Below are positions 18,243-24,200 of a stretch of DNA of 64,000 nucleotides, one piece after another; within the stretch, counting starts at the first letter, position 1; each line of letters starts with the position of its first letter. The stretch is from Stylophora pistillata (lineage: Eukaryota), in the NCBI RefSeq assembly GCF_002571385.2, contig NW_019217824.1, positions 531,547-595,546 of the forward strand. Direction: 5' to 3'. The notes under the pieces were generated by a model. That model had not been told where the DNA came from and made no database searches. It worked only from the letters and a program-made list of their open reading frames with translations. A program made the translations under genes and the position numbers.

Positions 18243-21200
18243 ATGGCTAGGGAATCTAACGCGCATCTAGTCTGGCTTTGGATCACTTTGTTCGTCGGAT
18301 GCCATTTCAAAGGTGAATTTTGGCCTCTTAAGGCGGTATTAATGAAGCTTTTTCTCTATTATTATTTACATTTTTCCATGGTTTATGTGAGCGCATTTGT
18401 TTCTTTAGAATACTTCCTAAATTTGCACGTTCCTTTTGATCACACCTTTAGCGCGTACAGTGAAAAGACTACTGAAATGCAGGCGTACTTTTCCCACTAA
18501 ACTGATATCATTGTGACACAGCAATTCTATTCATTTGTTTCTCGACAGCAACCGCACAGCCTGATCACTCGGGAATTTGCCACGAACAACACAGGGTGTG
18601 CGTCCGGGATGGTCAGTTCCAAAACTGTAAGCTGCAAGTGTTTGATAATATTTATAATAATGCTAAGAGGGAAATGCACAATCCAGCGTAATTAGCTGGC
18701 CCGAGACACAAGTGCAGCTGGGTTAAAATCGTTACGTGTACATCAAAAACGATTGGAACAGCTTCCGGACCGTGCGCTCTGACATCCCCAACTCGACCAA
18801 CTCCATATCATTCGTTTGCATGAGAGCGCGTTTTAAACTGAAGTGCATGAGATTAAAAAAGGAAAAAGAGAAGTGCCTGGGTTGAGTGTAATTACGATTG
18901 TTACACGAAAATCACGGCACAGCTGTTTGGTATGGTTGCTCAGTCTAATTAATGGAATGACAGTGTTGTCCAGACGAACTGCACTTCTCACGACACGATT
19001 TCAATAGAACATCAATTCTAAATGGTAGTGAGTTTGTTTAATGTCAAACACGCGGTACCGAATTCGTATTTTGAGACATCTCCTTTAGATCATTCAGATT
19101 AGAGCAAACACGGTTATTGATGAGGATGGATTAAATTTGCATAGGAGCGTATCAGCGCCACCGTCGTAAACATTGAATTAAACCTTCTTTTCATAATGGC
19201 GCAAGAAAAAATAAGACGAGTGCTTTTATTCGTAAATGCTATTAAATAAAAACGTTGGCCCCGCTTAATTGAGGCTTATTCTTATAGGCAGCGGCTTACT
19301 GCCGTCAAACAGCGACATCATTTAATTTTTTTAAATACATTATTTTATTACACAAAGTACTGTCGCTGTTAATCTCGCTCGGAAGCTCAGTGGTGGTTGG
19401 TTTATTATCTTAAAACTTCAAAAGTAAAAAATTAGCCAGCGATGTTATTTTTTTAAAATCAGACATTCGCAATTGTCGAACTGAAAGAAGCAACTAGAGA
19501 TTATCTCAAATGTCCTGTTTTCTTAATGTCATTTTCGTGTTGTCTGCTTCCTTTGTATCAACACCTGAGGGTAAAAACAATAAGACTGTAAATTTCTATT
19601 GTAAATTGATGTGGCCTTTTGTGGGACATATAAAAGGCGTTTGTCTCGTTTTTCCACCTCCTCTGATAAACAGAGCTACCAGTAAATTAAAACGAGTTAT
19701 CATCTAGGAAATCTACATTGTATTTAATTTAGAAACATGGGAAAGGGACGTTTCAATGTCTTTTGGATTCTTCTAACATAAAATTGGTTCTTTTTCACCT
19801 CCTTTGGTTTGTTTTTAGCTTAGTTTTGTTTTTGTTTCTTCTCAAAAATTAATTTATTAATGATTCCACAGACTTTGTAAGACTACTTTGAGGTCTACGA
19901 GTGTTATCATAAAAGAACTGATTACAGCTCTACACTTCCTACATAACAAAAGACTCTTGAAAAAAATTTCATATGAAAACAGGCAAAAAAATAATCAACT
20001 GTCTCTTAAAATACTTCTGTTTTGTAGTTCATTTATCAAGTAATTTATTCACAATATTCTAACTTCAGCAAAGGGCTAATTGCTTCTTAAGGGGAGAATG
20101 AGTCAGCATGCCCATCATAAAGAAAAAACAACGAATCTTCATTGCTAGCATACTGGTATTAATCACTAATAATAACATCCACTAACTGTAACCAACATTC
20201 AATCAAAAGTAAACAAAACCTTCCACAGCTCTGAACTAATTGTTAAATTAAACATAGTTAGATCAACCATTTTTAAAATTCCATATATCCTTGAATAAAC
20301 TTCCTAATGCTTTCACCATAAAGGAGGGACAGTTATTGGAAGGAGGGTGCTTAGTCGAGGGGGTGTTTATTATTTTCCCGTACTGATTCCACTGTAGTTG
20401 ACACATAAGAAGTTGTAAATAAAGTGGCAATAGAAATGGGTTTTCCTTGTATCCTTACTGTTTGAAAAAGTGAGGGAGGAGAGGGGTGTGTGCATGGAAT
20501 TATGGCCCTGGGCACAGGTCTCTATTCAAGAAGAGCACTCAATAGCATGTGCATGCTTATTCAAGGAGATCTAGTAAAACAAAATTTAACTTTTTTTGTC
20601 AACTCAGTTGGAGACACCAAAGCAAAATGGTTGGTGTGCTTGACTCTGGATAAAAAAAAAATCCAAATTTAAGCCCTGACAAGACACATCACTCTCACTG
20701 TGCCACTCTTGGCACAGGAGTTTAAATTGGTAATAACAGCATACTGTCAGGCAAACCTGAAGAAAGCCTTGAGGTTAACTCTTTCACTCTCAAGATCTTG
20801 CCATTAATTCTCCTTACTCTCTGCCATATAATTCACATGATGTCAGTTTGAAGAATTTGATATTAGATCATCCAAGAATCCCAATGTTGATGTTTTTCCT
20901 TACTCTTGTCACTTGTCTGCTCTATATCGTATTAGATACAATGATTATATGAAGTTCATATATTTTGAACTGCGGTATTATAGATACATATGATGCATGA
21001 TCCTCGCAGTAGAGAGCGCTATTTATGCAATAGCAAAAATCATATTATATTCATGATAATGTTAAGAGAGATTATGTTTTGGTTACTACTGGGAGTAAAA
21101 GAGTTAACTGGGGATGGACAGGCAATCCATCTAGGGAGATAAGTAGAAATTGCCTTTGAATGCTTCAAACAAAACAATGGTATCAATTTTCTTTGGCCAC

Positions 21201-24200
21201 TTCTACAAGCATCTCATGTTGGCACCAATCTTTTTCCCTTATAGGTACGTTTAGCAGGCTTGTACCAAGCATATCAAAAAAGGAGCTACTTAACATCAGC
21301 ATCAGAGTCAATGGTCTGGCAAAATTTACATGCTTACAAACAAACAATGAAGCAAGTTTAACAACTGTTCCCCACTTCGACTGGATAAAATGGACCAACA
21401 CACCATCTGCAGATAACCTTGATGTTGATTTTGGAAATTTCACAAGCATTATTTCAAACTCAAAATACACCATCACACCTGACACCAAGGAAAACTTACA
21501 TGTTTCATACCTAACCATTGACAATGTCACAGAATTTGATGTGGGATTGTATTCTTGTGTTGTATGCAACTCCTATGGAAGAGTTTACCAAAGTGCCTCA
21601 CTTAGTCTCAACACAACATTGGACCCAGGTTGGTTGAGTTGTTTTTAAAATTATAACAGCAACCACGATTTTGAACCCCTAGTCATAAATGGCAAACCCC
21701 TTGAACTAGTCACCAGTGCCAAATTGCTAGGCGTGACCATTAGCCACGATTTAAAGTGGAACATGCACACCTCTGAACTAAGTAGAAAATGTTCCTCTCG
21801 TCTCTACTTTTTGAGACAACTCAAGAGATCCGGAGTTGCACCAAGCGAACTTGTGCAATTCTATGTGACATGTATTAGGCCCGTCTTGGAATACGCAAGT
21901 CCTGTATTCCACCGTTCTCTACCAAACTACATCAGTGAAGATTTGGAACGGATCCAAAGAAGGGCACTCAGAATCATCTATCCTAACCTGTCATATTGTG
22001 TAGCACTAGAAACGGCTGGCCTACTGAAACTTCACGAGAGGAGGGAAAAAATCTCAACCAACCTGTTTGACGAGATAGTCCGTAACCCCACCTATAGACT
22101 CCACAGCCTCCTCCCCCAAAGGAAGAGTTGTAGATACGCACTGAGGCGCAAAACTGATTTCACTCTCCCCATATGCAAAACCGAGCGCTTGAAGAATAGT
22201 TTTATTTTTAGCCATATTTATAAGATGTAGATAATTTTCCTTCTTTCTTAACGACGAAGTTGTAATATTTTACACGTCCTTTTTATCATCTGTACTTGTA
22301 AATATTCCGTAATTCAGCCCATGGCTGCAAGGTGTTTATAATAAAGTATCTTTCTATCTATAATGGTATAGAATACACATTTCCTTTAATCCAAGGATTA
22401 TATCCTTTTCTGAATACAAATGGTTGGCCGAAACCTAAAAGCACAAGGGTACTAGCTCCAACTCTTCCTTCCATCCTAAAAGCAATGGAGGTTCATCCCT
22501 ACAAAAAGAGAGAGAGAGAGGTTCATCCCTACAAAAAGAGAGAGAGAGAGAGAGAGAGAGAGAGAATACCACAATGTTTGCTTATAGGGACATGAAAGTT
22601 TCCAAAAAAACCTCTTTAAATTAATAATTGACATAATTTATACATTTCATACTTTAGTCTTTGATTGCATTACTAGTCTGCAAAGGTGTACCCTTATGGA
22701 AAAAGAATCGGATTTTAAGGATGTTTGTTATATTTAATTATCTTAAATTGCAATAATAATTATTGTTTAGTGTTGACACAAAGTAAGCACCTTTCTTTAT
22801 TTCATTGTTTCCCACAGTTCATACTTCCACTTCCAGCACACCAAAAACTGTTGATTCCAGGGCACTTACAACACAGTCTACAAGTCAAAGCATGGCATCT
22901 CGGCAAATAAGAGTAATTGTGGGTTGCATAGGAGCATTTATGGGTGTTATTCTGTTGGCTATAGCCGTCTTTTTCTTTAAATGGAAACAGAAAGAAAAGA
23001 AAAATCAAGGATTGCCAATAATCCTCCAGGAACCTAACTTACCAGAAGAAGGGATTGATGGTACACCTCCCTTGTCAGTTAACTTTCAGAATGGGCACTT
23101 AGTAGCATCCACACAAAGACACTCACTTTTACCCTTGATACACAAGAGACACAGTAGTTACAGATCCCAGCTATCATCATCAGCATCTGGAGGAACTGTG
23201 GTAACATATGCAGATGGTATGCCAATTTTTTAGAATAAGGTGATTTGGTTGAGTCTTCTCTGGTGCATCGATCCCTAGTAGGAGTGCTCCTGAAGGAATC
23301 TTAATCGAGCTCAATCATTCCTAATGAGCTACCCCTCATGTAAACAGCATCCTTTGAACCAAATGTCATGAGTCCCACAGGCAGACGACATGCACTCATT
23401 ACAATGTCTGAGCTGTAGAGACATGAAGAACAGGGGTTGGGGCAGAAGTAACTCCAAGGTGGTCAACCAGAACAACATTTAAGGTCACTCCTTCACACTG
23501 ATGCAATGAATATTGGTCGCCTTCATCCTAACAAGAAGTTCTTCCATACTTGTCATTATTCTTTTACTGTAATCTAGAAAAGTATTTAAACCTTAATTAT
23601 TTCAACCACACCTTTTGATGGTTCTGTATTTCAGATTTATTTGATTATCCATTGGATGAAAAATGGGAGGTACCTAGAGAAATGCTTTTTATAAAGGATC
23701 TAGCTGGGGAGGGTGCATTTGGTTATGTCGCAAAGGCAGAAGCTTTTCAATTGCCAAATACTCCTACACCTTGTACTGTTGCTGTAAAGATGCTGAAAGG
23801 TTGGTAGTCAGTCTTTATATTCATAATGGATTATCAGAAAACATTGCAGATTTACTGAATTTTGCATGACTACATGAACAGATGGTTCATTCACTACTGT
23901 TTAAAAATCAAAGTTTGCCAAGAAAACAAAAGGAAACTAATCGAAACCTTTTCTGGATGACCTCAAATGAGCTTTGAAAATAATCTTTTGACTAAGTTGT
24001 GGTCAAATCGTACAAATTGTTTGTATTTCTTTCTGCTTCATAGAAGATGCCACTGATGCTGAATTGTCTGATCTGATCTCTGAAATGCAAACTATGAAGG
24101 AAATAGGAAGTCATAAGAACATAGTGAACTTTCTTGGAGCCTGTACTGTACAAGGTAATGGTAACTACAGTTCAAGAAAGAAGAAAATCAAAAATCTAAA

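What the first reader, a model, noticed from the sequence alone, without database searches (positions are those of the whole stretch)
18243..23216. FGFR paralog with only one Ig domain and an unpaired extracellular cysteine
Seen: the signal-peptide exon (phase 1) splices cleanly into a single Ig exon homologous to the Ig-III-like exon of paralog A, and the signal peptide appears to finish in that exon (GTFS). I found no Ig-like frame in 18313-21244. The mature ectodomain has three Cys (FTC, YSC and an extra one in YSCVVCN, where A has YTCFVSN), then a Ser/Thr stalk and a TM Cys. The kinase is intact. Established: FGF and heparan binding need Ig-II, the linker and Ig-III, and unpaired Ig-III cysteines in human FGFR2/3 cause ligand-independent disulfide dimers. 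Inference: a naturally covalent or constitutive dimer, a co-receptor for paralog A, or a receptor for a non-FGF ligand.
Basis: partly seen in the sequence, partly recalled or inferred. Interest (0 to 1): 0.75.

Follow-up and report, generated by a model that had tools for sequence, protein, structure and literature searches.

The report
Single-Ig coral FGFR with cysteine cap

Summary
The gene is real, intact and expressed, and it has only one Ig domain. RNA reads start at about 18060-18070 and contain no further Ig exon. It encodes [26 protein letters not shown], and its last base makes the junction codon Cys instead of Gly.

The main isoform therefore has six ectodomain cysteines: three in an N-terminal "cap" (C-x6-C-x8-C) and three in the Ig domain. 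All six are conserved in stony-coral orthologs and in a Nematostella protein.

The public protein P0161 ("FGFR3-like", source label Stylophora pistillata) is exactly this spliced product.

The kinase is FGFR-type and the Ig is D3-like.

Best reading: a conserved anthozoan FGFR subfamily in which D1-D2 are replaced by a cap that is probably disulfide-linked to the extra Ig cysteine. An obligate covalent dimer is unlikely.

The scan noted another apparently single-Ig FGFR elsewhere in this genome (s1-791889). It is a different gene.

The parts
18060..18242 (+). 5' UTR. The transcript starts at about 18060-18070, and the UTR contains three short upstream ORFs (ATGs at 18075, 18152, 18196).
   Evidence: RNA contigs begin at 18060 (X5) and 18070 (X11) with no loose end upstream. 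Upstream ORFs were listed.
18243..18312 (+). Coding exon 1: [23 protein letters not shown] plus the first base of the next codon (phase 1). It holds the n- and h-regions of the signal peptide.
   Evidence: Sequence. Equals residues 1-23 of P0161. The GT donor is used in the joints.
18549..18626 (+). It encodes [26 protein letters not shown], and its last base T plus GT of the next exon gives Cys. It carries the probable signal cleavage site (ATA|Q) and the three-Cys cap (C-x6-C-x8-C).
   Evidence: Joints 18312->18549 and 18626->21245, both GT..AG, in X22 reads (6 and 11) and in X5 and X11 contigs. Equals residues 24-50 of P0161. The motif is conserved in 9 of 9 orthologous sequences that cover it.
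21245..21628 (+). Single Ig exon (D3-like) with the core pair FTC / YSC and the extra Cys three residues after the F-strand Cys (YSCVVC).
   Evidence: Pfam I-set E 4.8e-6. 34% identity to paralog A's Ig-III exon. The PDB matches that span the whole domain are FGFR2 D3, E about 2e-6 to 5e-6. 20 of 24 listed runs hold the exon, 11 of them on record as RNA.
22818..23216 (+). Exon for the Ser/Thr-rich stalk, the transmembrane helix (with a Cys at its start) and the juxtamembrane region.
   Evidence: Joint 21628->22818 (X22 9 reads, X23 1 read, X11 contig). Equals residues 178-310 of P0161. AF2 predicts a helix at 205-234.
23635..28395 (+). Nine exons for the tyrosine kinase domain and C-terminal tail, at about 23635-23799, 24044-24154, 24514-24692, 25397-25519, 25901-25972, 26216-26254, 27262-27357, 27758-27862 and 28240-28395 (TGA stop). 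Exon ends are approximate to within a few bases.
   Evidence: Residue-to-window mapping of P0161, 100% identical. Pfam PK_Tyr_Ser-Thr E 3e-96 covering profile positions 7-258 of 258. All 60 PDB matches shown are FGFR1-3, E 1e-118 to 6e-112.

Best explanation
Window gene B (18060 to about 28395, + strand) is an expressed, intact receptor tyrosine kinase of the FGFR family. It belongs to a subfamily conserved in stony corals and in a sea anemone.

Its mature ectodomain has three parts:
(i) a cap of about 24 residues encoded by a 78-nt mini-exon, carrying three cysteines spaced C-x6-C-x8-C;
(ii) one D3-like Ig domain whose F strand carries an extra cysteine (Y-x-C-V-x-C);
(iii) a Ser/Thr-rich stalk.

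Shown here: the exon structure, expression, the absence of any further Ig exon, the FGFR-type kinase, and conservation of all six cysteines.

Inferred:
- The six cysteines form three intramolecular disulfides: the canonical Ig pair plus two that involve the cap.
- One of those staples the cap to the extra Ig cysteine. In general Ig topology that residue sits at the start of the F-G loop, at the same end of the domain where the N-terminus enters.
- The cap therefore sits where D2 and the D2-D3 linker sit in canonical FGFRs.
- The receptor is a monomer at rest. It is activated by ligand-induced dimerisation, probably by an FGF bound in a non-canonical way that does not use D2 or heparan sulfate, and it signals through a normal FGFR kinase with the YY activation loop.
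For: - RNA joints define exons 18243-18312, 18549-18626, 21245-21628 and 22818-23216. Transcript starts are at 18060 and 18070.
- Public protein P0161 equals this splice form at 100% identity exon by exon.
- There is no Ig-like frame elsewhere in 8600-21244. Pfam finds one Ig region and one kinase in P0161 and in P0158.
- Orthologs have the same layout: P0162, P0159, P0160, P0158, P0157, P0156, the fragment P0005, and Nematostella P0151.
- Cysteine columns in alignment A1: C34 9/9, C41 9/9, C50 9/10, C79 12/12, C154 14/14, C157 13/14. The C50 exception is P0003, whose N-terminus looks like unspliced read-through. The C157 exception is the frameshifted model P0005.
- Among the 162 proteins held, C-x6-C-x8-C together with YxCxxC occurs in all 8 full-length members (9 entries, because the partial record P0075 duplicates P0151) and in no other protein.
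- Paralog A and the Nematostella A-type protein P0053 have D2 and lack both the cap and the extra Cys.
- The kinase's best PDB matches are FGFR1/2/3.
- AF2 models the Ig domain with confidence: pLDDT about 80-90 for P0161 residues 60-175 and about 90 for P0075. The C-terminal half of the cap reaches 64-70 in P0075.
- Precedent: the single-Ig EmFR1 is inactive without ligand and responds to FGF1/2 (PMC6426264, passages).
Against: - No disulfide was mapped. The structure tool returns no coordinates, and the cap is modelled poorly (pLDDT under 50 for residues 19-55 of P0161).
- Canonical FGF and heparan sulfate binding need D2, which is absent, so FGF as the ligand is only a guess.
- One X11 contig shows the exon-skipped junction. 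That form would leave three ectodomain cysteines.
- Some orthologs carry a seventh cysteine (P0156 'SLYCSLD', P0160 'RSVCLS'), so a free thiol may exist in some species.
- B's kinase exons are not closer to Nematostella P0151 than to P0053. Orthology with P0151 therefore rests on the shared ectodomain signature and on the three Nematostella records (EDO43234/5/6) lying on a contig of the same length.
Confidence: 0.7

Rival explanations
1. One reading: the extra Ig cysteine is unpaired and drives a natural, ligand-independent disulfide dimer, as cysteine-gain mutations of human FGFR2/3 do.
For: - The extra Cys is real and conserved in 13 of 14 sequences.
- One X11 contig joins 18312 directly to 21245. 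That form would have three ectodomain Cys.
- That unpaired cysteines in human FGFR2/3 cause covalent dimers is recalled knowledge. A paper title to that effect stands in the reference list of PMC8764167.
Against: - The main splice form includes the mini-exon: X22 has 6 and 11 junction reads against 0 for skipping, X5 has a contig for inclusion only, and the public model P0161 includes it.
- The mini-exon adds three conserved Cys, for an even total of six.
- The skipped form would also lose the A-x-A signal-cleavage site.
- The single-Ig EmFR1 was not constitutively active.
Confidence: 0.08
2. The receptor is a covalent dimer despite the even cysteine count, because one cap cysteine pairs with its counterpart, or with the extra Ig cysteine, on a second chain.
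For: Nothing direct. No tool here could assign disulfides, and the cap is poorly modelled, so this topology is not excluded.
Against: - The strict co-occurrence of three cap Cys with one extra Ig Cys is most simply explained by pairing within one chain.
- There is no precedent in the FGFR family that I could find (literature searches).
Confidence: 0.1
3. Gene B does not bind ligand by itself. It works as a co-receptor or heterodimer partner of the neighbouring three- or two-Ig paralog A, or it binds a non-FGF ligand through the cap.
For: - D2 and its heparan- and FGF-binding surfaces are absent.
- A and B are tandem neighbours in the window.
- The Nematostella counterparts P0053 and P0075/P0152 lie on one contig of 1,172,175 bases with consecutive accession numbers.
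Against: - No expression or interaction data were available.
- The kinase is fully intact, which a pure decoy would not need.
- EmFR1 shows that a single-Ig FGFR can respond to FGF.
Confidence: 0.12

Closest known systems
Vertebrate FGFR1-4
   Same: - FGFR-type split-free tyrosine kinase, with the best PDB matches at E 1e-118 to 1e-112.
- [11 protein letters not shown] and the YY activation loop are present.
- Single-pass TM.
- The membrane-proximal Ig domain is D3-like.
- Symmetric phase-1 ectodomain exons.
   Different: - No D1, acid box or D2, so none of the canonical heparan-sulfate site and only part of the FGF site.
- A three-cysteine N-terminal cap instead.
- An extra conserved Cys three residues after the F-strand Cys.
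Single-Ig FGFRs of flatworms (Echinococcus EmFR1, Schistosoma FGFRB), as described in PMC6426264 (passages read)
   Same: Signal peptide, one Ig-like domain, TM and an active FGFR-like kinase. EmFR1 is silent without ligand and responds to FGF1/FGF2 in Xenopus oocytes.
   Different: Probably an independent reduction. I did not compare the sequences, as none were on hand.
Human FGFR2/FGFR3 cysteine-gain or cysteine-loss mutants (Crouzon/Pfeiffer syndromes, thanatophoric dysplasia)
   Same: A cysteine in or near D3 beyond the canonical pair.
   Different: In those mutants the cysteine has no partner (recalled knowledge). Here three additional conserved cysteines make the count even, and the arrangement is ancient and under conservation, not a lesion.
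Nematostella vectensis XP_001635297.2 'fibroblast growth factor receptor 1' (P0151) and coral proteins P0162, P0159, P0156-P0158, P0160
   Same: The same layout and signature: C-x6-C-[VI]-R-x-x-Q/K-F-Q-x-C cap, one Ig with Y-x-C-[VA]-x-C, stalk, TM and kinase.
   Different: P0151 is only 40% identical overall and its kinase is fast-evolving. I could not establish whether it is one of the published NvFGFRa/b genes.

Membership tests
FGFR family (receptor tyrosine kinases) | Kinase domain most similar to FGFR kinases, with catalytic [11 protein letters not shown] and the tandem-tyrosine activation loop | tested here: met
   All 60 PDB matches shown for P0161 are FGFR1/2/3, E 1.2e-118 to 5.5e-112. 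Pfam PK_Tyr_Ser-Thr E 3e-96. The motifs were read in P0161.
FGFR family (receptor tyrosine kinases) | Membrane-proximal Ig domain of D3 type | tested here: met
   34% identity over 105 aa to paralog A's Ig-III exon, E 2.8e-9. The PDB matches that span the whole exon are FGFR2 D3 (E 2e-6 to 5e-6). The higher-scoring contactin matches cover only the E-G strands.
FGFR family (receptor tyrosine kinases) | D2 domain plus D2-D3 linker (FGF and heparan sulfate binding) | tested here: not met
   There is no second Ig exon in the DNA or in the transcripts. Pfam finds one Ig region in P0161 and P0158. A linker-like P-x-I-S remains in front of the Ig domain.
FGFR family (receptor tyrosine kinases) | Binds FGF and is activated by it | not testable with these tools
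   This needs binding and signalling assays.
Constitutive disulfide-linked FGFR dimers (as in human cysteine mutants) | An odd number of extracellular cysteines, leaving one free | tested here: not met
   The main isoform has six conserved ectodomain Cys. Only the weakly supported skipped form (one contig) would have three.
Constitutive disulfide-linked FGFR dimers (as in human cysteine mutants) | Covalent dimer and ligand-independent kinase activity | not testable with these tools
   This needs non-reducing gels and phospho-signalling assays.
Anthozoan cap-plus-single-Ig FGFR subfamily (defined here) | N-terminal C-x6-C-x8-C cap together with Y-x-C-x-x-C in a single Ig, followed by TM and an FGFR kinase | tested here: met
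   Both motifs occur in P0161 and in all 7 other full-length members (P0162, P0159, P0160, P0158, P0157, P0156, P0151), and together in no other of the 162 proteins held except P0075, a partial record of P0151.

The most novel reading that the evidence does not exclude
Inclusion or skipping of the symmetric 78-nt cap exon acts as a switch. With the exon, all six cysteines are paired and the receptor depends on ligand. Without it, the junction codon changes from Cys to Gly, three cap cysteines are lost, and the conserved extra Ig cysteine is left free. That form could make covalent, ligand-independent dimers, so receptor activity would be set by splicing. Separately and more probably (about 0.35), the cap stapled to D3 is a previously undescribed ligand-binding module that replaced D1-D2 before sea anemones and stony corals diverged.
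Probability: 0.08. Interest if true: 0.75.

Novelty: new variant of a known kind. Interest (0 to 1): 0.4.

Why it matters
FGF recognition is understood through the D2-linker-D3 module. A receptor class kept in both stony corals and a sea anemone that has lost D2 and instead carries a small cysteine cap tied to D3 poses a clear question: can D3 plus a cap bind an FGF, or does it bind something else? That question is testable with recombinant ectodomains.

The finding also shows how one missed 78-nt exon can turn an ordinary even cysteine count into an apparent disease-like "unpaired cysteine".

The gene itself is already in public annotation, and a paper states that cnidarian FGFRs have one to three Ig domains (PMC11814522, passage). 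The new element is therefore limited to the conserved cap plus extra-cysteine signature. I did not find that signature described in searches or 68. Key papers (Matus 2007, Rentzsch 2008, Rebscher 2009) are not held and could not be checked.

Tried and rejected
- Hidden Ig exons. tblastn of A's Ig-II and Ig-III exons and of B's own Ig exon against the whole window found nothing between 8600 and 21244 below E 0.48. The reads show no further exon joints. Rejected.
- Known domain for the cap. Pfam found nothing on the ORF holding the mini-exon or on residues 1-60 of P0161. Nothing found.
- Structure prediction to place the cap. AF2 of P0161 with 14 sequences was poor (mean pLDDT 45.7, cap under 50). 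AF2 of the Nematostella partial protein P0075 with 19 sequences gave a good Ig domain and 52-70 for the cap. The tool returns no coordinates, so cysteine distances could not be measured. Inconclusive.
- Fold comparison.
- RNA families. Rfam on 17500-23500 gave no match at E up to 0.1.
- Is P0151 the published Nematostella Fgfrb? Ikmi et al. 2020 (PMC7467937, passages) place Fgfrb on 'Scaffold 4', whereas P0075/P0053 lie on a contig of 1,172,175 bases. By hand translation, not by a tool, the two guide targets printed in that paper encode no peptide of P0151. P0151 is therefore probably not that gene, but this is unresolved.
- Papers not held. Matus 2007, Rentzsch 2008 and PMC4580332 were not held. 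Supplements of PMC7467937, PMC6426264 and PMC11814522, which may show domain drawings or sequences, were closed.
- Kinase-tree test of B/P0151 orthology. Not done, because I had no outgroup proteins and would have had to join A's exons.
- Rows left out of alignment A1: P0009 (a mis-modelled Acropora entry that lacks 18 cap residues and has a garbled kinase end), P0007, P0028, P0083, P0054, P0055, P0076, P0079 (Ig-exon fragments) and P0075 (part of P0151).

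
Full report
WHAT IS IN THE WINDOW.
The window is a stretch of a stony-coral genome: G000 contig C41, 531547-595546. The runs that hold the exon are labelled as coral or 'organism A'. Two FGFR-like kinase genes lie in tandem on the + strand. Paralog A has Ig-II and Ig-III exons at 1593-1940 and about 2440-2853, then TM and kinase exons up to about 8600. 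Paralog B starts near 18060.

THE OBSERVATION.
- The Ig exon translates to a domain with FTC...YSCVVCN, where A has YTCFVSN.
- It scores as Ig (Pfam I-set E 4.8e-6) and is most like A's Ig-III exon (34% over 105 aa, E 2.8e-9).
- The PDB matches that span the whole exon are FGFR2 D3, E about 2e-6 to 5e-6. The higher-scoring contactin matches cover only the last strands.
- No other Ig-like frame exists between A's end and the Ig exon. The best tblastn matches there have E 0.48 and 4.5.

WHAT THE RNA SHOWS.
The Ig exon is held by 20 of 24 listed runs, 11 of them on record as RNA, from 8 studies. I laid two raw-read RNA runs (X22, X23) and two polyA contig sets (X5, X11) on 17500-23400.
- Contigs begin at 18060 (X5) and 18070 (X11) with no loose end upstream, so there are no upstream exons.
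- Joint 18312->18549 (GT..AG) has 6 reads in X22 and one contig each in X5 and X11.
- Joint 18626->21245 has 11 reads in X22 and contigs in X5 and X11.
- Joint 21628->22818 has 9 reads in X22, 1 read in X23 and a contig in X11.
It appears in one X11 contig (depth 6, 28 letters on the short side, 'between: not known').
- X23 covers the gene too thinly to count either way.

It encodes [26 protein letters not shown]. Its last base T joins GT of the Ig exon to give Cys, whereas the skipped junction would give Gly.

THE PUBLIC MODEL.
A profile-free scan of 1.84 billion representatives with the Ig exon gave 451 proteins at E up to 0.001. The full-length single-stretch matches at 50-60% identity were short Ig fragments plus one 563-aa receptor. 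Follow-up searches with database proteins returned P0161. It is 659 aa, named by its source 'fibroblast growth factor receptor 3-like [Stylophora pistillata]', and lies on a contig of 1,098,636 bases, the length of C41. P0161 maps to the window at 100% identity exon by exon, including the mini-exon. Every window query was a single exon, and the full-length work used P0161 and its database relatives.

CONSERVATION.
Seven further full-length proteins have the same layout: signal peptide, C-x6-C-x8-C cap, one Ig with Y-x-C-[VA]-x-C, stalk, TM and kinase. They are:
- P0162 (source label Pocillopora);
- P0159 (source label Oculina);
- P0156, P0157, P0158 and P0160 (unnamed transcript assemblies);
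- P0151 (Nematostella XP_001635297.2).
The Desmophyllum fragment P0005 also carries the cap.

In alignment A1 (14 rows), the cysteines at P0161 positions 34 and 41 are present in 9 of 9 rows that cover them. Position 50 is present in 9 of 10; the exception, P0003, has an N-terminus that looks like intron read-through. Position 79 is present in 12 of 12, position 154 in 14 of 14, and position 157 (the 'extra' one) in 13 of 14; that exception, P0005, is frameshifted there.

Among all 162 proteins held, the two motifs occur together only in these receptors. A-type receptors (window A, Nematostella P0053) have D2 and neither motif.

Two members have a seventh cysteine (P0156, P0160). A cysteine at the start of the TM is present in 6 of 8.

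WHAT IT IS.
The kinase is FGFR-type. All 60 PDB matches shown are FGFR1-3 (E 1.2e-118 to 5.5e-112). Pfam covers the whole kinase profile, and [11 protein letters not shown] and DYYRR are present. Pfam sees one Ig region and nothing else in the ectodomain. B is single-copy: its Ig exon's best paralog match in the genome is 39% identical, and its TM exon has no paralog.

HOW IT LIKELY WORKS.
Shown: one D3-like Ig, no D2, six conserved cysteines, expression, and an intact kinase.

Inferred:
- The signal peptide is cut at A-T-A|Q inside the mini-exon (-3/-1 rule; the 'A-Q-P' context recurs in the coral orthologs).
- The Ig core pair is C79-C154.
- The remaining four cysteines (three in the cap plus C157) pair within the chain, so one bond staples the cap to C157.
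- From general Ig topology (recalled), a residue three after the F-strand cysteine lies at the start of the F-G loop, at the end of the domain where the N-terminus enters. The cap would then sit where D2 and the linker sit in canonical FGFRs.

I could not verify the bond pattern. The two AF2 models give a confident Ig domain, but the cap is weak to middling (under 50 in P0161, 52-70 in P0075), and no coordinates are returned.

Because D2 carries the heparan sulfate site and part of the FGF site (recalled), ligand binding must differ from the canonical mode. There is a precedent that a single-Ig FGFR can still respond to FGF and is silent without it: Echinococcus EmFR1 gave 0% oocyte maturation without ligand, and 100% and 90% with FGF1 and FGF2 (PMC6426264, passages).

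The odd cysteine count came from the missing exon. A covalent dimer remains possible only for the weakly supported skipped form, or through interchain pairing that I cannot exclude.

NOVELTY.
The gene is publicly annotated. A 2025 paper states that Ig number in cnidarian FGFRs ranges from one to three (PMC11814522, passage). I found no description of the cap plus extra-cysteine signature in full-text searches, but the key cnidarian FGFR papers are not held and supplements were closed.

The published Nematostella Fgfrb appears to be a different gene from P0151. It is placed on 'Scaffold 4' in PMC7467937, whereas P0151's partial records sit on a contig of 1,172,175 bases next to the A-type P0053. 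The cap-type receptor may therefore be an overlooked third class, but this is unresolved.

TOOLS THAT WERE CLOSED.
The look-up of encoding contigs, the second listing of cluster members and the protein-atlas search were unavailable. As a result, synteny in Nematostella, the taxa of the unnamed orthologs, and look-alikes of the cap could not be checked.

EARLIER NOTES OF THE SCAN.
s1-791889 reports another apparently single-Ig FGFR 254 kb upstream. I confirmed a third FGFR-like gene there, with a D3-like exon at L021:3550-4029 and kinase exons at L021:5100-8750. It reads YTCIVGN, without the extra cysteine, so it is a different gene. Its N-terminus was not resolved here.

s1-780684 reports an FGFR-type ectodomain joined to a TIR domain. 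I saw the same kind of gene next to this locus.

Noticed in passing
G000 C41:498178-504778 (L010:8178-8249, L011:560-4778); further copies at L015, L018:62-490 and L019:75-7300: Genes that join a three-Ig FGFR-like ectodomain to a TIR domain. Protein P0092 has Pfam hits for 3 Ig plus TIR. Its Ig-II is 83% identical to the Ig-II exon of FGFR paralog A. No TM segment is visible in the model. At least three copies lie on this contig.
   Followed up: partly
G000 C41:519568-521304 (L012:9568-9975, L013:1008-1304), about 10 kb upstream of the window: A partial duplicate of the Ig-I and Ig-II exons (79% and 98% identical to P0092) lies between the Ig-TIR gene and paralog A. A's true 5' exons were therefore not established.
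   Followed up: no
window 20849-21045; also 6-109, 247-356, 494-603 and 688-780 (- strand): An interspersed repeat inside B's intron has very high RNA depth (15,000-27,000 in the contig sets, 120-280 in raw reads), with many strand-switch joints and loose ends. Copies at 92-93% identity stand in tandem at the window's start. There is no Rfam match.
   Followed up: partly
window 21649-22227: A retrotransposon-type ORF fragment (193 aa; the only Pfam hit is ALKBH8_N, E 2.9e-8) lies in the intron after the Ig exon. It is covered by reads of both orientations carrying many variant letters, i.e. from other copies.
   Followed up: no
window 18075, 18152, 18196: Three upstream ATGs with short ORFs (15, 32 and 3 codons) lie in the 5' UTR of gene B. 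The second ORF overlaps the main start codon.
   Followed up: no
G000 C41, about 275500-281000 (L021:3550-8750): A third FGFR-like kinase gene has one detectable D3-like exon that reads YTCIVGN (no extra cysteine). The open frame ahead of its linker holds two further cysteines (LCNEPC). Its N-terminal exons are unknown. An upstream ORF with a C-x6-C-x8-C pattern (L021:1151-1273) has only a weak donor site and may be chance.
   Followed up: partly
protein P0009 (source label Acropora cervicornis) compared with transcript-derived P0156: The annotated Acropora model lacks the 18 cap residues that hold all three cap cysteines, and its kinase end is out of frame. It looks like an annotation error rather than an isoform.
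   Followed up: no
window 46046-46222: A weak Ig-like match to B's Ig exon (E 0.025, 27% over 59 aa) lies inside another gene's territory. It is possibly a relic or chance.
   Followed up: no
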